From NCBI GenBank assembly GCA_053919585.1, contig CM132785.1: a DNA stretch of 64,000 nucleotides; one strand, given 5' to 3'. This DNA comes from Euprymna scolopes. Lineage: Eukaryota. Position numbers and translations under genes: made by a program. The notes below the pieces were generated by a model. The model did no database searches. It was not told the DNA's origin and was given only the letters and a program-made list of their open reading frames with translations. This document shows, piece after piece, positions 1,769 to 22,099 of this stretch (the stretch's first letter is position 1; each line of letters opens with the position of its first letter).

Positions 1769-3007
1769 GAGGGGGGCTACTGTTCAATATTTGTGTAAAA
1801 TATTACATAACTGATTTTTCCCCTATTTTTGATTATCCGTTACATTACTACCGGTGATTTTGTGGCCTGTCAAGAATATATTATGAATATATTATTATCA
1901 TTTTTAATTTTGTAACTGGCTGTAACATTTTCTTGCATTATTTACAACTTTTTGCAAGATATATTTTCAACTACAACGTAAACAAACCACTATTCGTACT
2001 ACCATAATAACAGCAACACAGAGAGAGAGGGAGAGAGAGACAGACAGACAGACAGACAGAGAGGGGAGGGCTACTGTTCAGTATTTGTGTAAAATATTAC
2101 ATGTAACATTTTCTTGCATTATTTTCAACACGTAAGCGTACTATTTTTTTTGTTGTTGTTTGTTTACAAATACTGTGTCAATAAAATTCTTACTTTCTTT
2201 TATATTATTAAGAAAATAATAGCGTGTTACAATTAGTGCATGAGCACCAACATTTTTACTATAAGGGACTTACGTAGGACTCCTGGGACTTACGTAGGAC
2301 CCCCCCCCCTGGAGTAAATGTGGTATTGCGGTGATTTTGTGGCCTGTCAAGAATATATTATGAATATATTATTATCATTTTTAATTTTGTAACTGGCTGT
2401 AACATTTTCTTGCATTATTTACAACTTTTTGTAAATAATGCAAGATATATTTTCAACTACAACGTAAACAAACCACTATTCGTACTACCATAATAACAGC
2501 AACACAGAGAGAGAGGGAGAGAGAGAGACAGACAGACAGACAGAGAGGGGAGGGCTACTGTTCAGTATTTGTGTAAAATATTACATGTAACATTTTCTTG
2601 CATTATTTTCAACACGTAAGCGTACTATTTTTTTTTGTTGTTGTTTGTTTACAAATACTGTGTCAATAAAATTCTTACTTTCTTTTATATTATTAAGAAA
2701 ATAATAGCGTGTTACAATTAGTGCATGCGCACCAACATTTTTACTATAAGGGACTTACGTAGGACTCCTGGGACTTACATAGGACCCCCCCCTGGAGTGA
2801 ATGTGGTATTGCGGTGATTTTGTGGCCTGTCAAGAATATATTATGAATATATTATTATCATTTTTAATTTTGTAACTGGCTGTAACATTTTCTTGCATTA
2901 TTTACAACTTTTTGTAAATAATGCAAGATATATTTTCAACTACAACGTAAACAAACCACTATTCGTACTACCATAATAACAGCAACACAGAGAGAGAGAG
3001 AGAGAGG

Positions 3008-3039
<32 letters not shown>

Positions 3040-3338
3040 GAGGGGAGGGCTACTGTTCAGTATTTGTGTAAAATATTACATGTAACATTTTCTTGCATTA
3101 TTTTCAACACGTAAGCGTACTATTTTTTTTGTTGTTGTTTGTTTACAAATACTGTCAATAAAATTCTTACTTTCTTTTATATTATTAAGAAAATAATAGC
3201 GTGTTACAATTAGTGCATGAGCACCAACATTTTTACTATAAGGGACTTACGTAGGACTCCTGGGACTTACGTAGTACCCCCCTGGAGTAAATGTGGTATT
3301 GCGGTGATTTTGTGGCCTGTCAAGAATATATTATGAAT
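1672..3338. repeat. Tandem array of ~485-bp units containing (GA)n/(GACA)n microsatellites
   Basis: Marker AAACAAACCACTATTCGTACTACC recurs at about 1680, 1980, 2466 and 2949. The first unit is shorter (~300 bp). Units are nearly identical. Confidence 0.95.
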
Positions 3339-3531
3339 GATGGCAATAAAAAAGTATATGATAAAATTGCTGAAAAAGCTAGAAAAGCTGAATATTATTG
3401 AAAAAATAAAGATAAAATAAAACAAAGAGTTCAGAATTATAAAAAAAAAACTCAAAGCGGTAAATAATGATACTTATAAAAAAAAGCAAAAAGAGTCAAA
3501 TAAAAAATATTTCAATAAAAATAGAGAAAAA

Positions 3532-4194
3532 ATGCATGCGAAAATGGCCCAGTATTATAAAATAAATAGAGAAAAAATTTGTGCAAAAGCATATTATAAC
3601 AAATATAAAAATAAACATAGAAAAAAAGCATCTAAATTTACTTGCAAATTCGAAATGTCAAGCAAAGATGCTAATTTTCATCGACACAATGAAAATCAAA
3701 TTAATAACAGTGACTACAGAATATCAATGACTCGTCTGTGTAGAATCGAAGATGGCTGTCCAGACTCAGCTCAGAAATTGGAATATGCTAAAAGATTGCA
3801 TAACAATTTGTCTGATTTGAGTCCGAATTTGACAATTGCTCAAATGAGGAAGAAATTGGATAGTTTCCAAAGTTGCAAAGGTATGCATTCTGATAGAATT
3901 TATTGCTGTGGCCAAAGTGATTGCACGGACAAGCTGGCCCTGCTGAAACTCTTGTCACCACACTCGCAACACCTGAGAACAGTGATCAGAAAAATATATC
4001 GATTATTGTCGATTGGAACATGGCTTAACAAATATGACATCGCAATACTTGAAGGGGACTGGTCAATATATAGTGAGTTAATTTACCAGGTTAGCAGGGA
4101 TGCTACTATTTCTGACCTTTACAATGAATCCTTTTCAAATGAAAATGAATTTCACACTGAGGTTTATGTTACAACAAAATATGCCAATTTGTAA
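3532..4194 (+). CDS. N-terminal fragment of the element's RepHel-like protein (basic Y-x-x-N-R-E-K repeats, Cys/His-rich segment)
   Basis: 220-aa ORF directly upstream of the helicase on the same strand. Lys/Tyr-rich repeats continue upstream through stops to about 3340. No diagnostic domain recognised. Confidence 0.45.
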   Translation: MHAKMAQYYKINREKICAKAYYNKYKNKHRKKASKFTCKFEMSSKDANFHRHNENQINNSDYRISMTRLCRIEDGCPDSAQKLEYAKRLHNNLSDLSPNLTIAQMRKKLDSFQSCKGMHSDRIYCCGQSDCTDKLALLKLLSPHSQHLRTVIRKIYRLLSIGTWLNKYDIAILEGDWSIYSELIYQVSRDATISDLYNESFSNENEFHTEVYVTTKYANL

Positions 4195-4196
4195 TC

Positions 4197-5950
4197 TGTA
4201 AATCATATGAGCAATCATTACATCAAAATGCTCCATATTTGTCTGAAATGACAAATTATGAAAGTATTAAGAAAAAAATTAAAGATGCTATTGAAATAAA
4301 CAAAAAAATAGAGCAAAAATCTAAAAATTATGAAAATGAAAATAACGCTGATGATGATCAAATTGATTGCGATCCTAATATGGCTAAAGAGGCAGATAAA
4401 AATGAAGCTGATTTGAATATGCCTCAAATCAGACATGTCACTGAAGTTCAAGTTTTAGAAAATGAGCAAAAATTGAATTTCATTCAAAAAGAAATTTATA
4501 ATGAAATTATTTCCAAACTTGAGCAACAAAATCTTCATTGGAATGAGGAAAATCCTATTCACAGGTGCAATTGTGACGATTGTCCACAAATTCTCAAATT
4601 TATTAATGGTTTTGTGGATGTGGGCAAATCTTTTCTGATCAATGCACTGGCAGATAAAATTACTCTCACATATCCTGCCATCAATGGACCCAGTGTAGTT
4701 ATTTGTGCTCCTACTGGTGTCAGTGCTTACATTTTGAAAGGATCTACATGCCATAGTCTTTCAACTAAATATGCAGCATGGTTCTACACCTAAATATGAA
4801 CCATTATCAAAGGATAAAATAAAAAGTTTGAGAACCATGCTTGGATATGCGAGATTATTCATTATTGATGAAATAAGCATGGTTAGTCACTTGCAATTAG
4901 CATTTATTCACCAACGTTTGCAAGATGTTTTTGGTGATATTAGGAAACAAGTGTATCCATTTGCAAACATGTCAATTGTTGCATTTGGTGATTTATTTCA
5001 GCTTCCACCTGTTAATGAAAAACCTGTATTTTCCAAAATATCTATTCAAGATGCTAGAAAATCAAATTTGGGAATTGCTGGTATAAATTTGTGGTCATAT
5101 TTCGATTATGATGAATTGACCATAAATGTGCGACAAAAAGATGACAATGAAAACTTTGTTAATATTCTTAACAGAATAAGACTTGGGTCACCAACTGATT
5201 AGGATATTGAGATCTTGAAAAGGCATCGAATCAATCCTAAACAAAAAGCAAATATTGATCAAGTTACTGATCTTTTGCAAAATTTGCAAAAGAAAATGCA
5301 TATTATTTGCATTGTACCCACAAATGAATCTGCTGAGGAAGTGAATTATAAAATGTTGAAAAAAAATAATATTCATATCATTGAAATTTCAGCAACTGAT
5401 TCCAACTTAAGACAAAAAACCGTAACAAAAAAAAAAAAAAATCAAAACAGACACCAAAAACTTCTAAACTTAAAAAGATTTCTGACACAGCTGGACTTGA
5501 AACTGTGCTTAAAATTGGAATTGGTGCTAGATGCATGTTGCGTCGAAATATTGATATTGAAAAAGGACTTTGCAATGGTACAATGGGTACAGTCACTGAA
5601 ATACAAATGAAAGATAGCAAAGTTGTTGCTGTGACTGTAAAATTTGATCATATGCAGTCAATGTTGAATTTGTGCAAGCTGACTATGAACTTTCTCCTGG
5701 ACTCTTTGTGACTAGATCTCAAATACCTTTGTCACTCAGCTATGCTTTAACTGTCCACAAAACCCAAGGTATTTCAGTCGATGGTATCATTGTTGACTTG
5801 GGATCTGATGTCTTTTCAGATGGAATGGCCTATGTAGCTTTGTCACGTGCTAGAAAGCTGTGCAATGTCTATTTGATTGACCTTGACCCTCATAAATTGA
5901 CCATGTGTAACAAAAGTGCATGGACTGAATATAATAGATTGAGGGCCAAA
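4197..5950 (+). pseudogene. Disrupted PIF1-family (SF1B) DNA helicase
   Basis: Motifs spread over five ORF pieces: LNxxQ, degenerate Walker A FINGFVDVGKS, APTGVSA..GSTCH, IIDEISMV, FGDLFQLPPV, ELTINVRQ, LRRNIDIEKGLCNGTMG, QIPLSLSYALTVHKTQG, GMAYVALSRAR. Frameshifts near 4760, 5435 (poly-A) and 5655; in-frame TAG at 5200-5202. Confidence 0.93.
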
Positions 5951-6988
5951 AGAGACAGGGTTGATTTGCCACCGCTTCCTCCTTGTTCTGTTATGCCTCA
6001 AAGTTTGTCATTGTACAAACAGACTTATAAACGAAAAAAAACAATCGTTATAGATCATGATTTGAAGCAAAAACATAATAGTCCAAATAGAAAATGGCTG
6101 AAAATAGACAATTCAATTTCTCAAAATAATTTGGACCTCAAATTGATCAATGAAAGAAATGCTTGTTTTGCTAACAGTATTGTTCAGACAATTTACCACC
6201 TTCCTTTGTTGTCTAACATCATTAAAAGCATTCCAAACATTGATTTGCCAATTCAGCAATTAAAAAGATTGCTTGTCCCTGGCACTCACAGTGTTGCTGA
6301 TCTTAGAGAATCAATCGGAGGCGTTTTTAATAGTGGCCAACAAGAATGTGCTATTGCATTTTGGGAATTTTTGATAAACAAGTGTCCTGACAGTGCCAAA
6401 CAATTATTCACTTTTGAAGAAAGTAAAGTGATGAAATGTCTTAGAATACACAAACAAAACTGCCAAAGACTACAAGATAGTGAATGTAATTGCACCTTTA
6501 AAGTTGGCTGTGGGTTCCAAACCTTGCAGATTGCTGGAATACCACAGAGATTAGTTATTCAACTTCATCCTACTGATGGTCGACAGCAATTTAAAAGTTT
6601 GCTCAAAACTGATGCTTCAGTGCTCAAACATTGTATCAAATGTCAGCAAAATACTGAGCACTTGGAAAATGTCACTAGAACGTTTCCTACTGCAATGAAA
6701 TATTTGTGTGTTCAAATAAATAGATTTATGTTTGAAAATTATAATCCTCGGCGAATTAATGCTGAAATTATGAATTTCAGTACAAAAAAACAAAATATTT
6801 TTGGAACAAATTTCAAAGTAAAAACAGCTATTCTGCACACTTTGAATGGAGTCGATTTTGGGCATTATACTTGCATTGTTAGAAATAATATTAAGTGGAA
6901 TATTGTCAGTGACACTAACTTTTCTAATAATGTCAATTTTCCTTCCAAAATGTCCAATATTGTTGGCATTTTTTTTGAAAAAATATAA
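5672..6988 (+). CDS. PIF1 C-terminus fused in frame to a ubiquitin-specific protease (peptidase C19/USP) domain
   Basis: Cys box LINERNACFANSIVQTIYHLP; QQD-like box FNSGQQECAIAF; CxxC (CIKC); YLCVQINRF; His box AILHTLNGVDFGHYTCIVRNNIKWNIVSD. Open for 438 codons. Confidence 0.85.
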   Translation: MQADYELSPGLFVTRSQIPLSLSYALTVHKTQGISVDGIIVDLGSDVFSDGMAYVALSRARKLCNVYLIDLDPHKLTMCNKSAWTEYNRLRAKRDRVDLPPLPPCSVMPQSLSLYKQTYKRKKTIVIDHDLKQKHNSPNRKWLKIDNSISQNNLDLKLINERNACFANSIVQTIYHLPLLSNIIKSIPNIDLPIQQLKRLLVPGTHSVADLRESIGGVFNSGQQECAIAFWEFLINKCPDSAKQLFTFEESKVMKCLRIHKQNCQRLQDSECNCTFKVGCGFQTLQIAGIPQRLVIQLHPTDGRQQFKSLLKTDASVLKHCIKCQQNTEHLENVTRTFPTAMKYLCVQINRFMFENYNPRRINAEIMNFSTKKQNIFGTNFKVKTAILHTLNGVDFGHYTCIVRNNIKWNIVSDTNFSNNVNFPSKMSNIVGIFFEKI

Positions 6989-7339
6989 AGGAAGCAAACA
7001 TTTGATAAAAACAAGGTCATACATTCAATAGAAATAAATAGTGGTGGTTTTTGCTTTTAAAATTCAACCATCATCTAGGCATGGCATGGGGATGTAACTG
7101 TTACTCTGCAGGCGAACAATAGCACTGTTATGAATCATAACTAAACTGGAGACACGATTTCTGCTTCAAGAGATAAATGTAATATAAAATTTTAACCGGA
7201 AAATTATTTTACTGAAAACTATTGATCAGTATTATTACACTCTAAAAAGGAAGATACTAGAGTTAAAAAAACAACAATTTTATTTACACTCAAGCAATTC
7301 AAAATTTATCTCAAAACTGACTCTTCAATTCGCAAATAT

Positions 7340-8115
7340 TGTCAACAAAATACTGAGCATTTGCAAAAAGCCACTAGAAATAGAATTTTTCTACTGCAAT
7401 GGAATATGTGTGTGTTCAAACAAATAGATTTTTATTTTAAAATTACGATCCTCAATGAATTAATTCCGAAATTATATATTTCAATAAATTTTTTTTGCAG
7501 AAATTTCATTGTAAAACCAGATATTCTTCACTTTTATGAAAGTCGATTTGGGCATTTTACTTGCCTTATTTAGAATAATAACAAGTGAAATATTATCAGT
7601 GACACCAATATTTCATATAATTTTAATTTTCATTCCAAAATGTCGTCCATCAATATTGGCATTTCTTTTGAAAAATATAAAAGAAACAAATAATTGAGAA
7701 AAATCAGACCATATATCCAATCGAAATAGCAAAAACTTGAGTGCTAACCTCCCAATCAGCGTGGTATGGGGCTATAACAGTATCCCTGCAGGCGAACGAT
7801 AGCACTTTTATGAATCACTTAAATTCAGAATTTAAAACAAATTTCTGTAAATTTTTTTTATGTAATACTTTTCCTGTGATCATTAGCATGTTCTATTAAT
7901 TAATAAATATAATTCTATTATTTTTATTGTTGCTTACGTTGTTGATGAATAGAATTTTAAAAAGTTAGGTATTTTCTTGAAAAAGGATTTCGGCCTCAAC
8001 AGAAAGATGTTCAACAAAATGTTTAACCATAAAATTTACCAAAAACTATTAATATTAAACTATAAAAAGAAAGATACTAGAATTTAAGCAAAAAATATTT
8101 TATTTCAACTCAATC
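7340..8115 (+). repeat. Diverged tandem duplicate of 6640-7300 (3' part of USP domain plus downstream sequence), frameshifted
   Basis: GTCAACAAAATACTGAGCATTTG vs GTCAGCAAAATACTGAGCACTTG; GTCGATTTGGGCATTTTACTTGC vs GTCGATTTTGGGCATTATACTTGC; CTGCAGGCGAACRATAGCACT and GAAGATACTAG-type segments in both copies. Confidence 0.9.
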
Positions 8116-9091
8116 AGATGTGCCTTATGCACTAATAAAAATGCAATTGGCATTTTGTTGAACTTTTTAAGATTTTAAATATTTATAAATTTTCTCATTA
8201 TAAAAAACGATTATTATATTGATTATAATTTTTTGACAGAAGAAATAAAATGAATTGCATAAAAAACATTAGAAGACAAATTTTTAAATCATAAGATAAA
8301 TCTAAAGTCACTAAATTATCAATAAAGTTTGTCATAATAATACATTTATTAGATTAATTTTAATTTGGAAAGATAGAAGTACAGTTAAAACATCCAGAAT
8401 CAGCGAATTCATTAAATTTTATCATAACAAAAACGATTGTTTTATTTCAATGCTATTGATAAGAAAATATTTGTTTTACTTGATTAAAATTAATTAAACA
8501 TAGATTATATCTGTAGTATATAAATATTTTTTATAATGAAACAATTTATTAATTTTTGCTGATTTACGATTTTTTCATTGCCGGTTTTTATTTTGCAAAT
8601 TAAAAATAATCCAATAATCTTTTTTGATAATGAAAAAATGTGCTGACAATTAAGTGATTAAAAATATTTGAATATTTTTTTAAATAAACAATAAATTAAA
8701 ATCAATTTACTAAATAATCATTTTTTTTTCAAGATTTATTTACACAATTTACTAATATTTATTGATATAATTGGATAATTTTGCATTGTTCTTCTAATGT
8801 TTTATATTCATTTTATTTCTTCTGTCAAAAAATTATAATCAATATAATAATCGTTTTTTATAATGAGAAAATTTATAAATATTTAAAATCTTAAAAAGTT
8901 CAACAAAATGCCAATTGCATTTTTATTAGTGCATAAGGCACATCTGATTGAGTTGAAATAAAATATTTTTTGCTTAAATTCTAGTATCTTTCTTTTTATA
9001 GTTTAATATTAATAGTTTTTGGTAAATTTTATGGTTAAACATTTTGTTGAACATCTTTCTGTTGAGGCCGAAATCCTTTTTCAAGAAAATA
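7970..9091. repeat. Large inverted repeat, ~286-bp arms (7970-8255 and 8806-9091), ~550-bp spacer
   Basis: TATTTTCTTGAAAAAGGATTTCGGCCTCAACAG... is the reverse complement of ...CTGTTGAGGCCGAAATCCTTTTTCAAGAAAATA. No mismatches noticed by eye. Confidence 0.95.
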
Positions 9092-9099
9092 ATATATAA

Positions 9100-9720
9100 G
9101 TCACGTAGAAGGAAGAAACGCGTGAAGACACAACTATTCAGACAATTTTATTATCAAGAGTTCTGCTGTCTGAATGTGCAATGTAGAGTTGTTTCCCTTG
9201 CACTGCACCTGTGTCACGTGACAATTGCTTGGCCTCACTTTGAGATTGTGTTGAAAACATGGCGTCGGCAAGCTCTTATCTACCAACGCCGATCATTACG
9301 CTCTCTGTGAATTCATCGACGACACCTGCCTCCATTGTTGCAGTTTTACTGAAACACTTACCGCCGTTGAAACCTCTTCTGTCTCCTTTGGTTCTGCCAG
9401 TCGTTACCTGCTATTCGTGTGATAACATTAACGCCATCAGTGTCCGTCGCCCTATCGCCGCCGGCCGTCTTTGACAACAGACCCGAAGAAGAAAAAATAT
9501 ATAAATGCTACAAAAGGAATAACAACTACCACCCAGAAAGAAAAGAAAAATAGCCAAAGCAACTTCGTCTGGTACATACATTTGTATCTATATACCCCAT
9601 ATATATATATATATATTTGTGTTATGATGTATATACTTGAAACAACAGTAAAACGCAGTATACGCACGCTTACAAACACTCGCTTACAACTCTATCTCTA
9701 CTGATTCGTATTCGTTCTAA
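9100..9720 (-). promoter_or_regulatory. CpG-rich segment: candidate promoter / non-coding first exon (about 9702-9362, minus)
   Basis: Locally GC/CpG-rich; minus-strand TCAGT initiator at 9704-9700; donor GCG|GTAAGT at 9361; palindromic TGTCACGTGACA at 9212-9223; YY1-like AACATGGCG near 9256-9264. Confidence 0.4.
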
Positions 9721-11642
9721 AATTCATATTTTATTTTTGACTTGTCTTCAAAAATACGAATTACTTGATAATAACTTTTGTCAACCTTGATAATTAAATG
9801 TAGAGAGTGGCTCTCGCAGAATAATACATAAATAAATAACAAAACAATTTCACATTTTATGTAGCTAAAATGCAATAGACGGCATTAGTGAACTGAACTG
9901 ATCCCAACGTACGTTTTTATATTGTCTTTATTTTTTTCTTTAAGAATTTATTTCCTTTTTGGCTTAGAAAATATTCAGTTATTCGTCAATGATATAACCG
10001 TAGATTAACCATAAACAAATATAATCCAAAAATCATATTAAAAAAAAAATAAATAAAAATTATGCGATTAATGTTGATATCTACTGCACTAAAAATAAAA
10101 ACTATTTGTTTATAAAAGAAAAAAAAAAAAACACGCACAAAAATATGCATTGCATAAAATAATGCGAACATTTTGAATTTTTCGCACAAAATATTACAAA
10201 CTTTAAAATACGCGCTATTTTTTAAAAATATATTTTAAGGAAAGTTTATCCTTAATATTTTGATCAAGTTTTAAGTGATTTTTTTTTCTTTTATAAGAGA
10301 CCCACCCTGCCCACAACATTTCCTCAAAATAAACATTTTTATTTTATTTTTTTTTACAAAAATTCTACTCTAGCACATGTTTACTTCAGGTTCGGCAGGC
10401 ATAAAAGATAATAACGCAAACTTCTTTTAACAAAGTATTTTATAATAATTATAAAAGAAAGTAATAAAATCCATCATTCAAAGTAAAATATATGCATGAT
10501 GTTGTGTGTAAGATTCGACAAGCCTGAACACAAAAACTTTTTTACACACTCTTGACATTTTTAAAGATAACACACACTACTACAACACACTTCTTAAAAT
10601 AGTCTTGTTCTAATCTTTACCACCAACTTCTCCCGACTAAAAAAAAAAAATCTATATTTATCTGACGTTACCCGGTAGGAGATACGTTCACAATTAAAAA
10701 AACAAAAAATAGAATTAAAAAATTCTCTGTTTTCTCTTTAATTTTTGCCTTCCAAAAATATTCGATTAATAGTAAATAAAAAGGTTCAATATATATCCAT
10801 GAAAATTGCATGTAGGCAAGTAACGGAGACATACAAGATCTTTCACGGTTGAAATGGTTTTATTTTACTAGAAAAGATAGAAATTCTGTTTATTTCCGAC
10901 TTGGTCTTTTTGACGTCAGACATTGATTTGTAGCTTAAAAATAATTAACTATTTCCCCAATTGTGAAATTAAAATTCTTGAACTTGTATAACTATTAATA
11001 ACACTATTGTGAGGTGTATTTGATGCATTTCCAAAAATAAATGGCAAAACTATAATTTCCCCCCCCCCCCAACAACTAAAAAAATGCTGATATTGTCTTG
11101 AAAGTAAGGAAGTAAAAGTTAATCCTTTTTTTCCAAAATATTTGCCCTTCCTCTCATTTTCCGTTTTTTGTTCTCCTTATTTAATTTATTGGAAAATACG
11201 AAAGATCTGTCATGTAATTTCAATTAACTGATTAGGTTAATTTCACGTGCTTAAAAAATAGATTCACCAAGACATTTTGATAACATTTTTCTTGTTTTGG
11301 TTTACTTGTTTGTAAATAGTCGTTGGTTTAGATAATGCATTTATATTGCGTCTTAAGTAAGATTTAAGTTTTCTAAAAGTCGAAATAAACTGGTGAGACT
11401 ATATATTTTTTTTTCCTTAACATTTAAAAAAACTGATTTTTATTTAGTCATTTTTTTTTTTTTTTTTATTACTAACAATTGACCACTAATTTGTTTACTG
11501 TAACTCTCTATACATGAACACCTTTTTACTTTAGTTTTTTGAGAACATTTTAATGTTTCTTAAAACGAATAGACACAGCTATGTGTATTTAAAGCAGAAA
11601 TGCAATCCTCGGGTTAAAAAGAAAAAGGTAAATACGAAAACC

Positions 11643-11781
11643 NNNNNNNNNNNNNNNNNNNNNNNNNNNNNNNNNNNNNNNNNNNNNNNNNNNNNNNNNN
11701 NNNNNNNNNNNNNNNNNNNNNNNNNNNNNNNNNNNNNNNNNNNNNNNNNNNNNNNNNNNNNNNNNNNNNNNNNNNNNNNNN
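11643..11781. other. Assembly gap (139 N)
   Basis: Run of N immediately upstream of the STK11 start codon. Confidence 1.
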
Positions 11782-11793
11782 TTCTTTTGGATT

Positions 11794-12452
11794 ATGGATG
11801 AACCACAATGCACACCAGCTGCATCTTCATCGGAACCGGGGAACTTTCAAGCGGATAACTCCAAGATCACTGAAGATGAGGTTCACGTAAGCGAAACCGC
11901 TGTTGGTGGTCATCCAATGGGTCGATCTAATATTCCTCCCCCGCCGCGGTTATTGTGTGATGTAGAAGATGAAGATAGTCATCGGCACCGGGAATTTCTG
12001 CAATCGGGGAAGGCAAATGAACATTTTCTTTTATGTCAGGGCAGATTCGGTAACGATGAACAGCATGGCATTTACGGTGACCCCCCACAGTCATTCCGGT
12101 GTGGAGGTGGTGACGACGAATACCCTGATGATGAACCTGACATTATCAAGTTTGAGATGACGGACAAGAGTAGCTATTACCCGCCATGTGATTTTGATTT
12201 TCTTAATGCTGATGAGCCGCTTTCGTCGGCGCTCATTTTCCGCCGGGTCGACTCTGATCAGATTGTATACCAGCGGCGGCAACGAAGAGCTAAACATGTT
12301 GGCAAATACTTGATGGGTGATGTTCTAGGTGAAGGCTCCTACGGCAAGGTGAAGGAGGTTTTAGACACAGAAACTTTGTGTCGAAGGGCTGTCAAGATTC
12401 TCAAGAAAAAGAAGCTGAGAAAAATCCCAAGTGGGATCAAAAACGTTAAGAG
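11794..12452 (+). CDS. STK11: Serine/threonine kinase 11 (LKB1), first coding exon
   Basis: [72 protein letters not shown] closely matches the LKB1 N-lobe (human [73 protein letters not shown]). Donor AG|GTATGT at 12453 is phase 2, the same position as vertebrate intron 1. Confidence 0.97.
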
Positions 12453-12918
12453 GTATGTATCAACCATTGTATTAGGAGGTGGATGGCGTTAATAATGCAA
12501 TTATTAAAAGCAGACAACATTGTTTCTAATGTCTTATCTGGGATTTAGGTACCAATTTGAAAGATGAATTTTGGGTGCTAAAACCTGCAAAATCGAAAAA
12601 TGGTTTGAAAACCAATGTCTGCCTTTTTTTTTCATATACATTTATTAGAATTTTAAAGAATTTTCTTAATTTCAAGTTGAGAGCAGAAAACATTTTTAAT
12701 TATTTAACATTAGACTTAATCTGAAGGTGAATATATGAAATATTAATTACAATTCAAAGATCTTTAAAGATAAGATTAATCAGTGCTTATTCAAAATCAC
12801 ACTTTAAAAAAAAAAAAATGCAGAAAAATCTTTATGTATGCACTCATCACGGAATGAAACTCATATTCCAAAAATTATGTGAATTGATTAAATATTTACT
12901 TTTAAACTAAGAAAATCA

Positions 12919-12984
12919 AAAGTTATGATTTTCAGCGATTTTACTACTAAGTTTAGTAGTAAAATCGCTGAAAATCATAACTTT
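12919..12984. repeat. Perfect palindrome, 32-bp stem, 2-nt loop
   Basis: AAAGTTATGATTTTCAGCGATTTTACTACTAA-gt-TTAGTAGTAAAATCGCTGAAAATCATAACTTT. Confidence 0.95.
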
Positions 12985-13049
12985 AGTAACTAAACTGTAT
13001 TGAACATAAGGCTGATTTTGATCTGAACACTTTGAATTCTATTGTCTCC

Positions 13050-18816: not shown

Positions 18817-18842
18817 TAAATAATTTATATATATTTTTATAT

Positions 18843-21800
18843 ATTATCTAATTATTATAAATATATATAAATTATCTAATTATTATAAATATATATAAAT
18901 TATCGAATTATTATAAATATATATAAATTATCTAATTATTATAAATATATATAAATTATCTAATTATAAATATATATAAATTATCTAATTATTATAAATA
19001 TATATAAATTATCTAATTATTATAAATATATATAAATTATCTAATTATTATAAATATATATAAATTATCTAATTATTATAAATATATATAAATTATCTAA
19101 TTATTATAAATATATATAAATTATCTAATTATTATAAATATATATAAATTATCTAATTATTATAAATATATATAAATTATCTAATTATTATAAATATATA
19201 TAAATTATCTAATTATTATAAATATATATAAATTATCTAATTATTATAAATATATATAAATTATCTAATTATTATAAATATATATAAATTATCTAATTAT
19301 TATAAATATATATAAATTATCTAATTATTATAAATATATATAAATTATCTAATTATTATAAATATATATAAATTATCGAATTATTATAAATATATATAAA
19401 TTATCGAATTATTATTATAAATATATATAAATTATCGAATTATTATAAATATATATAAATTATCGAATTATTATAAATATATATAAATTATCTAATTATT
19501 ATAAATATATATAAATTATCTAATTATTATAAATATATATAAATTATCTAATTATTATAAATATATATAAATTATCTAATTATTATAAATATATATAAAT
19601 TATCTAATTATTATAAATATATATAAATTATCTAATTATTATAAATATATATAAATTATCTAATTATTATAAATATATATAAATTATCTAATTATTATAA
19701 ATATATATAAATTATCTAATTATAAATATATATAAATTATCTAATTATTATAAATATATATAAATTATCTAATTATTATAAATATATATAAATTATCTAA
19801 TTATTATAAATATATATAAATTATCTAATTATTATAAATATATATAAATTATCTAATTATTATAAATATATATAAATTATCTAATTATTATAAATATATA
19901 TAAATTATCTAATTATTATAAATATATATAAATTATCTAATTATTATAAATATATATAAATTATCTAATTATTATAAATATATATAAATTATCGAATTAT
20001 TATAAATATATATAAATTATCGAATTATTATAAATATATATAAATTATCGAATTATTATAAATATATATAAATTATCGAATTATTATTATAAATATATAT
20101 AAATTATCGAATTATTATAAATATATATAAATTATCTAATTATTATAAATATATATAAATTATCTAATTATTATAAATATATATAAATTATCTAATTATT
20201 ATAAATATATATAAATTATCTAATTATTATAAATATATATAAATTATCTAATTATTATAAATATATATAAATTATCTAATTATTATAAATATATATAAAT
20301 TATCTAATTATTATAAATATATATAAATTATCTAATTAGTATTATAAATATATATAAATTATCTAATTAGTATTATAAATATATATAAATTATCTAATTA
20401 GTATTATAAATATAAATTATCTAATTATTATAAATATATATAAATTATCTAATTATTATAAATATATATAAACTATCTAATTATTATTATAAATATATAT
20501 AAATTATCTATTATTATAAATATATATAAATTATCTATTATTATAAATATATATAAATTATCTAATTATTATAAATATATATAAATTATCTAATTATTAT
20601 AAATATATATAAATTATCTAATTATTATAAATATATATAAATTATCTAATTATTATTATAAATATATATAAATTATCTAATTATTATTATAAATATATAT
20701 AAATTATCTAATTATCATTATAAATATATATAAATTATCTATTATTATAAATATATATAAATTATCTATTATTATAAATATATATAAATTATCTATTATT
20801 ATAAATATATATAAATTATCTAATTATTATAAATATATATAAATTATCTAATTATTATTATAAATGTATATAAACTATCTAATTATTATTATAAATGTAT
20901 ATAAACTATCTAATTATTATTATAAATGTATATAAACTATCTAATTATTATTATAAATGTATATAAACTATCTAATTATTATTATAAATGTATATAAACT
21001 ATCTAATTATTATTATAAATGTATATAAACTATCTAATTAGTATTATAAATGTATATAAACTATCTAATTAGTATTATAAATGTATATAAACTATCTAAT
21101 TATTATTATAAATGTATATAAACTATCTAATTATTATTATAAATGTATATAAACTATCTAATTAGTATTATAAATGTATATAAACTATCTAATTAGTATT
21201 ATAAATGTATATAAACTATCTAATTAGTATTATAAATGTATATAAACTATCTAATTAGTATTATAAATGTATATAAACTATCTAATTAGTATTATAAATG
21301 TATATAAACTATCTAATTAGTATTATAAATGTATATAAACTATCTAATTAGTATTATAAATGTATATAAACTATCTAATTAGTATTATAAATGTATATAA
21401 ACTATCTAATTAGTATTATAAATGTATATAAACTATCTAATTAGTATTATAAATGTATATAAACTATCTAATTAGTATTATAAATGTATATAAACTATCT
21501 AATTAGTATTATAAATGTATATAAACTATCTAATTAGTATTATAAATGTATATAAACTATCTAATTAGTATTATAAATGTATATAAACTATCTAATTAGT
21601 ATTATAAATGTATATAAACTATCTAATTAGTATTATAAATGTATATAAACTATCTAATTAGTATTATAAATGTATATAAACTATCTAATTAGTATTATAA
21701 ATGTATATAAACTATCTAATTAGTATTATAAATGTATATAAACTATCTAATTAGTATTATAAATGTATATAAACTATCTAATTAGTATTATAAATGTATA

Positions 21801-21931
21801 TAAACTATCTAATTAGTATTATAAATGTATATAAACTATCTAATTAGTATTATAAATGTATATAAACTATCTAATTATTATTATAAATGTATATAAACTA
21901 TCTAATTATTATTATAAATATATATAAATTA
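18843..21931. repeat. ~3.1-kb AT-rich minisatellite, 28-bp unit grading into a 31-bp unit
   Basis: TAATTATTATAAATATATATAAATTATC (28 bp) on the left; TAATTAGTATTATAAATGTATATAAACTATC (31 bp) on the right. Confidence 0.98.
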
Positions 21932-22099
21932 TTACTGAAGGAAGATTTTTAGAAGTTGACTTATTTGGGCTGAAGTCACAGTCCTGTCAACAACAATTGT
22001 TTAATTCTAATTGTCAGTTTTTTAATTCAATTACAACATGATTAACCTTAGTATAAATTGGTAACATTGGTTAATTATGTATAAAAATCCAATCAAAAT

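What the first reader, a model, noticed from the sequence alone, without database searches (positions are those of the whole stretch)
3340..6988. Rolling-circle-type element encoding a PIF1 helicase fused to a USP (C19) deubiquitinase
Seen: PIF1 motifs V/VI run in frame into a compact domain with the USP Cys box (N-x4-C-F-x-N-S), a QQ box, a CxxC finger and a His box (GHY...W...SD), with no introns. Known: Helentrons typically carry an AP endonuclease after the helicase, and OTU cysteine proteases are described as Helitron accessory domains. A C-terminal USP-fold protease is not an architecture I recognise as standard. Inference: a transposon family that carries its own deubiquitinase, possibly to protect its RepHel protein from degradation or to strip ubiquitin from chromatin or replication factors at its sites of action.
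Basis: partly seen in the sequence, partly recalled or inferred. Interest (0 to 1): 0.85.

Follow-up and report, generated by a model that had tools for sequence, protein, structure and literature searches.

The report
Dead Helitron-like copy with USP deubiquitinase
This is a decayed, Rep-less copy of a high-copy rolling-circle (Helitron-like, group 2) transposon in a mollusc. Its helicase runs in frame into a genuine USP-type deubiquitinase domain, an architecture that is real but was already catalogued in 2024 and occurs from sponges to fish.

Summary
ORF 5672-6988 joins PIF1 helicase motifs V/VI to a compact USP (C19) domain. The domain scores above the Pfam UCH cut-off. The catalytic Cys, His and Asp and four zinc cysteines are intact. 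A confident model matches USP2, USP21 and USP8.

Relatives elsewhere encode DUF6570, a Helitron Rep, PIF1 and UCH, several of them in one uninterrupted ORF. The rolling-circle reading is therefore right for the family.

This copy is not autonomous:
- About 900 residues carrying DUF6570 and Rep are deleted, with the junction near 4191-4196.
- The helicase carries three frameshifts and a TAG stop.
- Near-identical copies carry different private lesions.

The Rep-less form is high-copy in the genome and is present in poly-A RNA libraries.

The architecture is not new. The HELIANO paper (NAR 2024) lists UCH among domains stably carried by group-2 Helitron-like elements. Full-length RepHel-USP proteins are already in public databases for whitefly, psyllid and sturgeon, and a PIF1-UCH protein for a sponge.

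What this adds is a mollusc member and evidence that UCH is fused in frame to the helicase, whereas that paper does not name it among the domains sharing the RepHel ORF. Deubiquitinase activity is untested.

Earlier scan notes on this genome mention other Helitrons, not this fusion.

The parts
3339..7137 (+). One copy of the repeat: a Rep-less, non-autonomous derivative of a group-2 Helitron-like element
   Evidence: The 5' limit is set because contigs of other runs start at, or diverge before, 3336-3340. The 3' limit is set because homology with the second 3' end stops after ...TTATGAATCA at 7137.
3421..4191 (+). Open frame for the N-terminal, Cys-rich region of the transposase
   Evidence: Positions 3775-4026 match aa 194-277 of the 1400-aa RepHel of L001 (E 1.4e-8). 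Positions 3898-4065 match aa 391-446 of P0084. There is no Pfam hit.
4191..4196 (+). Junction of the internal deletion that removed DUF6570 and the Rep (HUH) domain, about 900 residues
   Evidence: Full-length relatives align up to about 4065 and again from about 4200. Nothing in the window matches P0084 aa 447-1344 or L001 aa 278-1200. Three raw RNA reads carry other sequence before 4196.
4206..5700 (+). PIF1-like helicase, broken
   Evidence: PF05970 hits. The reading frame goes 0, then 1, then a TAG stop, then 1, then 0, then 2. Compared with the near-identical copy L007, the window has a 2-bp deletion at 4755-4757, TAG at 5200-5202 where L007 has CAG, five extra A in the run 5427-5441, and a 7-bp indel at 5651/5652.
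5648..6985 (+). Uninterrupted 446-codon frame: helicase motifs V/VI, a linker, then the USP domain
   Evidence: It aligns end to end with the C-termini of P0084, P0128, P0131, P0133 and P0136.
6119..6985 (+). USP (peptidase C19) catalytic domain, 289 aa. Cys is at 6164-6166, His at 6863-6865, Asp at 6911-6913.
   Evidence: Pfam UCH above cut-off, conserved motifs, model pLDDT 90.2, USP fold matches, codons checked.
7106..7137 (+). Best-conserved block at the 3' terminus (CTGCAGGCGAAC...TTATGAATCA)
   Evidence: Nearly identical in both 3' ends (7106-7137 and 7786-7817). Similarity ends immediately after it.
7293..7817 (+). Second, older, 5'-truncated copy of the 3' end (tail of the USP domain plus terminus), same orientation
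   Evidence: 74% nucleotide identity to 6585-7137. The protein match is 45% identity over 137 aa, E 4e-16. Alignment.
1852..3338 (.). 483-bp tandem array abutting the 5' end. It is a neighbour and possibly a related non-autonomous array.
   Evidence: TRF finds 3.1 copies at 96%. The same junction is in Logan contig L008. Another contig has different sequence before 3336. Bivalve Helitron-type elements often carry such arrays (PMC7348941).

Best explanation
The stretch 3339-7137 is a decaying, non-autonomous copy of a group-2 Helitron-like element (HLE2) family. In that family the RepHel transposase ends in a USP-type deubiquitinase domain. In intact relatives one polypeptide carries an N-terminal Cys-rich region, DUF6570, the HUH Rep nuclease, a PIF1-type helicase and a C-terminal USP. 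In the lineage sampled here an internal deletion removed DUF6570 and Rep. The deleted form was then amplified to high copy number in a mollusc genome, presumably mobilised in trans by a Rep-bearing partner (inferred). Individual copies are now accumulating private frameshifts, stops and deletions. In this copy the helicase is broken and the USP part happens to remain open with all catalytic residues. For the intact family, the likely role of the USP is to remove ubiquitin, either from the transposase itself or from host replication or repair factors recruited during rolling-circle transposition. That would stabilise them or counter a ubiquitin-based host restriction. This is inference by analogy with the OTU and VTD deubiquitinases of related elements.
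For: The USP domain is real. Pfam UCH scores 39.9 bits against a cut-off of 23.9. The Cys, His and Asp residues and the zinc cysteines are conserved in a 27-sequence alignment. The model has pLDDT 90.2 and matches the USP fold at E 6e-18, TM 0.78.

The family is rolling-circle. P0002 and P0004 (helicase C-terminus plus UCH) each lie just downstream of a 1388-1400-aa gene with DUF6570 + Helitron_like_N + PIF1, on two contigs of one metagenome. P0084 is a single 2245-aa ORF with DUF6570, Helitron_like_N, PIF1, Pif1_2B and UCH. P0128 and P0131-P0136 carry DUF6570 + Helitron_like_N + PIF1 + UCH, and P0129 and P0130 carry PIF1 + UCH only. All of the full-length proteins tested (P0084, P0128, P0129, P0131-P0136) align to the window from about 4200 onward, most of them to 6985, and none matches the window in its Rep region.

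The copy is decayed: frames and stop, lesion-by-lesion comparison with L007. L007 itself has an intact helicase but a broken USP (two 1-bp insertions and a 32-bp deletion), so the lesions are private to each copy.

The family is multi-copy. 1163 contigs of one DNA run lie on the 6-kb stretch at 95% identity or more. A contig across the Rep-less junction (3940-4251, no differences) has word depth 2113, against 10-40 for rare joint contigs.

It is present in RNA libraries. Contigs from oligo-dT RNA runs cover 3336-7900 at 99% identity or more.

Literature: UCH is listed as an HLE2-associated domain and DUF6570 as an HLE2 marker (PMC11417382). Helentron VTD domains were shown to be active deubiquitinases, and protection of transposition proteins from degradation was proposed (PMC9741609).
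Against: No Rep-bearing copy of this particular family was seen in the window or in the Logan contigs of this organism, so mobilisation in trans is assumed, not shown. The terminal inverted repeats and 3' stem-loop expected of HLE2 were not found convincingly. The target site could not be checked without empty sites. Word depths are not calibrated copy numbers. RNA-library contigs do not prove element-driven transcription. Deubiquitinase activity and its substrate are untested. The open USP frame in this copy may be luck (446 codons with no lesion, against four lesions in about 480 helicase codons).
Confidence: 0.85

Rival explanations
1. The Rep-less helicase-USP unit is not merely a dead deletion derivative. 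It is an amplified module of which some copies still make a working helicase-deubiquitinase. That protein would act in trans, as a helper or parasite of the autonomous element or as something co-opted by the host.
For: The Rep-less junction itself is high-copy. Copies are about 97-99% identical, so they are young. Different copies keep different halves intact: the helicase in L007/P0058 and the USP in the window. The unit appears in oligo-dT and poly-A RNA libraries.
Against: All three copies examined that cover coding sequence have at least one disabling lesion. Lesions are scattered as expected for neutral decay. No copy with a complete open Hel-USP frame was recovered. Presence in RNA libraries is common for silent repeats through read-through.
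Confidence: 0.1
2. It is a host gene, or a domesticated transposase, encoding a PIF1-USP fusion.
For: There is a long open frame with intact catalytic residues and it is present in RNA libraries.
Against: The helicase half has three frameshifts and a stop. There are hundreds of contig variants and a very high word depth. A second truncated copy lies 155 bp downstream. Relatives sit behind Rep domains.
Confidence: 0.03
3. It is a one-off capture of a host USP gene fragment by a single Helitron copy, or an assembly chimera.
For: Helitrons are known for capturing gene fragments (PMC11417382).
Against: The same helicase-USP junction is found in independent contigs and in distant animals, with the USP always C-terminal and in frame. 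Contigs of other runs cross the junction (L007).
Confidence: 0.02

Closest known systems
UCH-carrying group-2 Helitron-like elements (HLE2 subgroups c and d of Li et al., HELIANO, NAR 2024, PMC11417382)
   Same: A PIF1 helicase of Helitron type with a Pfam UCH domain downstream. Relatives carry the HLE2 marker DUF6570 and Helitron_like_N.
   Different: That paper found subgroups c and d mostly in lungfish and axolotl, and it does not name UCH among the domains sharing the RepHel ORF. Here the host is a mollusc and the UCH domain is fused in frame to the helicase. The fusion is also seen in uninterrupted 2000-3200-aa ORFs of relatives. The window copy lacks Rep. Assignment to subgroup c or d was not tested.
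Helentrons with VTD and/or OTU deubiquitinase domains (Erven et al., Nat Commun 2022, PMC9741609)
   Same: A rolling-circle transposase polyprotein that carries its own cysteine-protease deubiquitinase. The same functional rationale applies: stabilising proteins needed for transposition.
   Different: The protease fold is different (USP/C19, not VTD or OTU). It sits at the C-terminus after the helicase. There is no AP endonuclease in the window or in the relatives' Pfam lists. The VTD domains were shown to be active, whereas the USP domain has not been assayed.
Cellular USP catalytic domains (USP2, USP21, USP8, USP12/46, USP30)
   Same: The fold, the catalytic triad motifs and the zinc-ribbon cysteines.
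   Different: Only 12-16% identity. The domain is compact (289 aa). It has a Cys-rich insertion between the first two zinc ligands, which is the low-confidence part of the model (residues 110-135) and is shared with its closest relatives P0064 and P0065. It is attached to a transposon helicase.
Non-autonomous Helitron/Helentron elements of bivalves that carry tandem arrays (PMC7348941)
   Same: A high-copy, Rep-less rolling-circle derivative in a mollusc, lying next to a tandem array.
   Different: Those elements are short and non-coding. This derivative keeps about 3.4 kb of helicase-USP coding sequence.

Membership tests
USP / peptidase C19 (Pfam UCH PF00443) | Profile match above the curated cut-off | tested here: met
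   39.9 bits against 23.9, E 4.7e-10, aa 158-418 of the ORF.
USP / peptidase C19 (Pfam UCH PF00443) | Cys box with the catalytic Cys and the preceding Asn; His box with the catalytic His; third residue Asp or Asn | tested here: met
   N-x4-C-F-A-N-S with Cys at 6164, GHY with His at 6863, W..SD with Asp at 6911. N11, C16, N19 and Q23 are nearly invariant in 27 relatives.
USP / peptidase C19 (Pfam UCH PF00443) | Palm-thumb-fingers fold with a four-Cys zinc ribbon in the fingers | tested here: met
   Model pLDDT 90.2. The top 50 PDB matches are all USP catalytic domains, TM up to 0.78. C107, C172 and C175 are invariant and C123 nearly so.
USP / peptidase C19 (Pfam UCH PF00443) | Hydrolysis of ubiquitin or ubiquitin-like conjugates | not testable with these tools
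   Needs a Ub-PA or Ub-AMC assay.
Helitron-like element, group 2 (HLE2) | HUH Rep nuclease (Helitron_like_N) upstream of the helicase | tested here: not met
   Absent from this copy: no Pfam hit and no tblastn match to the Rep regions of nine full-length relatives. Present in the relatives. The copy therefore qualifies only as a non-autonomous derivative.
Helitron-like element, group 2 (HLE2) | PIF1-type helicase homologous to that of RepHel proteins | tested here: met
   PF05970 hits. Positions 4200-5700 align with the helicase of P0084, P0128 and P0131-P0136. It is broken by four lesions.
Helitron-like element, group 2 (HLE2) | DUF6570, proposed as the marker that separates HLE2 from HLE1 | tested here: not met
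   Deleted in the window copy. Present in L001, L002, P0084, P0128 and P0131-P0136. Marker status comes from PMC11417382.
Helitron-like element, group 2 (HLE2) | Short terminal inverted repeats (12-16 nt) and a stem-loop at the 3' end | tested here: inconclusive
   No terminal inverted pair stood out among 268 chance-level pairs. Folds of both 3' ends are no better than shuffles, z -0.76 and +0.67. Only two 3' ends and one 5' end were available.
Helitron-like element, group 2 (HLE2) | Insertion between T and T | tested here: inconclusive
   A T precedes 3339 here and in a second copy's contig, and a T follows 7137. However, the boundaries are uncertain by 1-4 nt and no empty site was available.
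Helitron-like element, group 2 (HLE2) | Dispersed multi-copy family with a conserved 3' terminus | tested here: met
   1163 DNA contigs at 95% identity or more on 6 kb, with word depths in the thousands. Near-identical copies L007 and L008. Two 3' ends share the terminal block.
Helentron in the strict sense | AP endonuclease (Exo_endo_phos) after the helicase | tested here: not met
   No such domain in the window ORFs or in the relatives scanned. The USP domain occupies that position.

The most novel reading that the evidence does not exclude
USP is a third, independently recruited deubiquitinase fold (after OTU and VTD) that is a true in-frame part of the HLE2 transposase across Metazoa. In this mollusc a Rep-less helicase-USP module has been selectively amplified and is still expressed. 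It would then act as a trans-acting helicase-deubiquitinase (helper, parasite or host-co-opted factor) and not as junk.
Probability: 0.1. Interest if true: 0.55.

Novelty: new member of a known kind. Interest (0 to 1): 0.3.

Why it matters
It matters only modestly. The finding confirms that some rolling-circle transposons carry a USP-class deubiquitinase as an integral C-terminal domain of the transposase. It extends the known hosts to a mollusc. It also suggests a correction to the published catalogue, which does not name UCH among the domains sharing the RepHel ORF. Together with the OTU and VTD domains of related elements, it strengthens the case that deubiquitination is a recurrent need of these transposons. 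That could be tested biochemically with an intact family member. The copy in this window is itself a dead, non-autonomous relic.

Tried and rejected
- A single-sequence search of PDB sequences with the USP part gave only weak hits (best E 0.011, USP15). All were USPs, so I relied on Pfam and the fold search instead.
- The search for terminal inverted repeats and for a 3' hairpin gave nothing above chance.
- A homology search with the N-terminal ORF 3421-4191, meant to find Rep-bearing copies in the same species, returned only the identical ORF. That ORF lies on contig L008, which carries the same tandem-array junction and is probably the same locus in another individual.
- DNA around the 2245-aa single-ORF relative P0084 could not be fetched because the sample file was too large.
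- Comparing L001 with L002 did not give clean element boundaries. The two are about 70% identical across the gene and share further sequence downstream.
- The ESM Atlas look-up gave only unnamed eukaryotic clusters and viral UCH clusters, with nothing usable.
- One literature search with synonyms returned only cancer deubiquitinase papers.
- I considered and rejected introns as the cause of the frame changes. Comparison with L007 shows them to be small indels and a C-to-T stop.
- I considered assembly error. The 2-bp deletion at 4755 is absent from three other runs and from L007 and L008, so it may be an allele or an error of this assembly. The TAG at 5200 was not contradicted by the RNA-run contigs laid on it.
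- Supplementary tables of the HELIANO paper are not held, so the species list for UCH could not be read.
Full report
**Setting.** The window is AT-rich animal DNA (about 30% G+C). It has an STK11/LKB1-like kinase exon at 11794-12492. Public runs that hold the element are labelled as one coded organism, or as mollusc or invertebrate metagenomes, so the host is a mollusc.

- ORF 5672-6988 (438 aa; the frame is open from 5648, 446 codons) begins with PIF1 helicase motifs V and VI.
- Pfam gives UvrD_C_2 at aa 23-67 (26.2 bits, just under its cut-off of 27.4) and UCH (PF00443) at aa 158-418 (E 4.7e-10, 39.9 bits against a cut-off of 23.9).
- Upstream pieces hit PIF1 PF05970: 4771-5202 at E 1.1e-10, and 4239-4793, which carries the P-loop, at E 1.3e-4.
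- In an alignment with 26 relatives, the window keeps the Cys-box Asn and Cys, the QQ box, four zinc-ribbon cysteines, the GHY histidine and the W..SD aspartate. The codons are TGT at 6164, CAT at 6863 and GAC at 6911.
- An AlphaFold2 model of the 289-aa domain built on that alignment is confident (pLDDT 90.2, pTM 0.88). The only weak stretch is a Cys-rich insertion at about residues 110-135.
- All 50 listed Foldseek PDB matches are USP catalytic domains: USP2 6dgf_A at E 6.4e-18 and TM 0.78, then USP21, USP8, USP35, USP12/46 and USP30.

**Is it a rolling-circle element?** For the family, yes.
- A word-indexed search with the ORF found proteins that span the helicase C-terminus plus USP in one frame (P0001, P0002, P0004, P0007; 27-33% identity).
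- P0002 and P0004 lie on two different contigs of one metagenome. Each sits just downstream of a 1388-1400-aa gene with DUF6570, Helitron_like_N and PIF1. The gap between the two genes in L001 looks like two short introns plus one in-frame stop.
- An exhaustive HMMER search with the USP part alone found 65 representatives. Eight of them still show the helicase C-terminus in front of the USP.
- One representative, P0084, is a single uninterrupted 2245-aa ORF with DUF6570, Helitron_like_N, PIF1, Pif1_2B and UCH.
- A further search from P0084 found the same five-domain architecture in P0128 and P0131-P0136. These include named proteins of Cyamophila willieti, Bemisia tabaci and Acipenser ruthenus. 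It also found a PIF1+UCH protein of the sponge Dysidea avara.

**What is this particular copy?** It is a non-autonomous, decaying derivative.
- Nine full-length relatives align to the window from about 4200 onward, most of them to 6985 (helicase through the end of the USP). P0084 also aligns in a short N-terminal stretch (3898-4065), and the L001 RepHel does so at 3775-4026.
- Nothing in the 64 kb matches their DUF6570 and Rep regions. About 900 residues are therefore missing, between roughly 4065 and 4200.
- Three raw RNA reads carry different sequence immediately before 4196. This places the right breakpoint there and hints at longer variants.

The helicase frame runs 0, then 1, then a TAG stop at 5200-5202, then 1, then 0, then 2. 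Comparison with a 97%-identical Logan contig (L007, encoding P0058 with an uninterrupted helicase) pins the lesions in the window:
- a 2-bp deletion at 4755-4757;
- TAG where L007 has CAG;
- five extra A in the run 5427-5441;
- a 7-bp indel at 5651/5652.

L007 in turn has its own lesions in the USP half: single-base insertions near 5758 and 6033 and a 32-bp deletion at 6267-6298. Lesions are thus private to each copy, as expected for neutral decay after a recent burst. The open USP frame here needs no special explanation, although zero lesions in 446 codons against four in about 480 is mildly unusual.

The 2-bp deletion at 4755 is absent from two RNA runs, one DNA run, L007 and L008. It may therefore be an allele or an error of this assembly. 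The TAG is not contradicted by the RNA-run contigs.

**Copy number and expression.**
- One DNA run contributes 1163 contigs at 95% identity or more to the 6-kb stretch, with summed word depths of about 2000-13000.
- A 312-nt contig that crosses the Rep-less junction without a difference has depth 2113. Rare joint contigs have 10-40.
- These are not calibrated copy numbers. They do show that the deleted form itself is highly repeated.
- Contigs from small oligo-dT RNA libraries cover 3336-7900 at 99% identity or more, with depth falling from 5' to 3'. This shows presence in RNA libraries, not element-driven transcription.

**Ends.**
- Contigs of other runs begin at, or diverge before, 3336-3340.
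- A second, older, 5'-truncated copy of the 3' end lies at 7293-7817, at 74% identity.
- The two 3' ends share a strongly conserved terminal block (7106-7137 and 7786-7817). Similarity stops right after ...TTATGAATCA.
- I could not demonstrate the short terminal inverted repeats or the 3' stem-loop described for group-2 elements, nor the T|T target.
- The 483-bp tandem array at 1852-3338 abuts the 5' end. Such arrays are typical companions of bivalve Helitron-type elements (PMC7348941).

**Comparison with what is known.** The HELIANO study (PMC11417382):
- lists UCH among 20 domains stably included in Helitron-like elements;
- reports it as almost exclusive to group HLE2 and enriched in subgroups c and d, which come mostly from lungfish and axolotl;
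- names DUF6570 as the HLE2 marker;
- names only DUF6570, Herpes_Helicase, Herpes_teg_N and UvrD_C_2 as sharing the RepHel ORF, and says the others are in different ORFs.

The data here show an in-frame helicase-USP fusion in the window and in many relatives, including uninterrupted ORFs of 2000-3200 aa.

Erven et al. (PMC9741609) showed that VTD domains of zebrafish Helentrons are active deubiquitinases. They noted OTU domains in the same elements and proposed protection of transposition proteins from proteasomal degradation. No paper in the searchable library assays or discusses the USP domain of these elements beyond the catalogue entry.

**Mechanism.**
- Shown: a USP fold with an intact catalytic apparatus, covalently attached to the C-terminus of a Helitron-type helicase, conserved across distant animals.
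- Inferred: in intact elements the domain removes ubiquitin, or a ubiquitin-like modifier, from the transposase or from host replication or repair factors engaged during rolling-circle transposition. That would stabilise them or counter host restriction.
- Inferred: the Rep-less derivative was mobilised in trans.
- For this copy, no function is expected.

**Verdict.** Novelty is low: this is a new mollusc member of a catalogued kind, with a small correction on ORF structure. An earlier scan note reports another Helitron type, with an AP endonuclease, in this genome (s1-250432; not checked here).

Noticed in passing
window 7970-8255 and 8806-9091: A perfect 286-nt inverted repeat (100% complementary) with a 550-nt spacer. 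DNA word depth there is the highest of the stretch laid (about 72,700 at 8001-8200). It looks like a very high-copy foldback or MITE-like repeat, or possibly an assembly artefact.
   Followed up: partly
window 1852-3338: A 483-bp tandem array (3.1 copies, 96% matches) with an internal (AGAG)n/(CAGA)n tract. Every unit contains the octamer TTATGAAT (1881, 2358, 2841, 3331). The element starts right after the last one, and the same octamer closes both 3' ends (7128, 7808). It may be a head-to-tail array of a related non-autonomous element, or it may be chance in AT-rich DNA.
   Followed up: partly
window 18838-21932: A 28-bp minisatellite with about 106 copies, in a region of only 10-15% G+C.
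   Followed up: no
window 11553-12492: An STK11/LKB1-like kinase exon (ORF 11794-12492) directly after an N run at 11643-11781. The element lies about 4.5 kb upstream of this host gene.
   Followed up: no
L001 9700-10060: In the metagenomic full-length relative, the RepHel frame is interrupted between the PIF1 half and the Pif1_2B/UCH half. The interruption looks like two short (about 60-nt) introns plus one in-frame stop, so some family members are not intron-free.
   Followed up: partly
window 6440-6520 (ORF aa 256-278): A Cys-rich insertion between the first two zinc-ribbon ligands of the USP fingers. It is shared with the closest relatives P0064 and P0065 and is modelled with low confidence. 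It may be an extra metal site.
   Followed up: no
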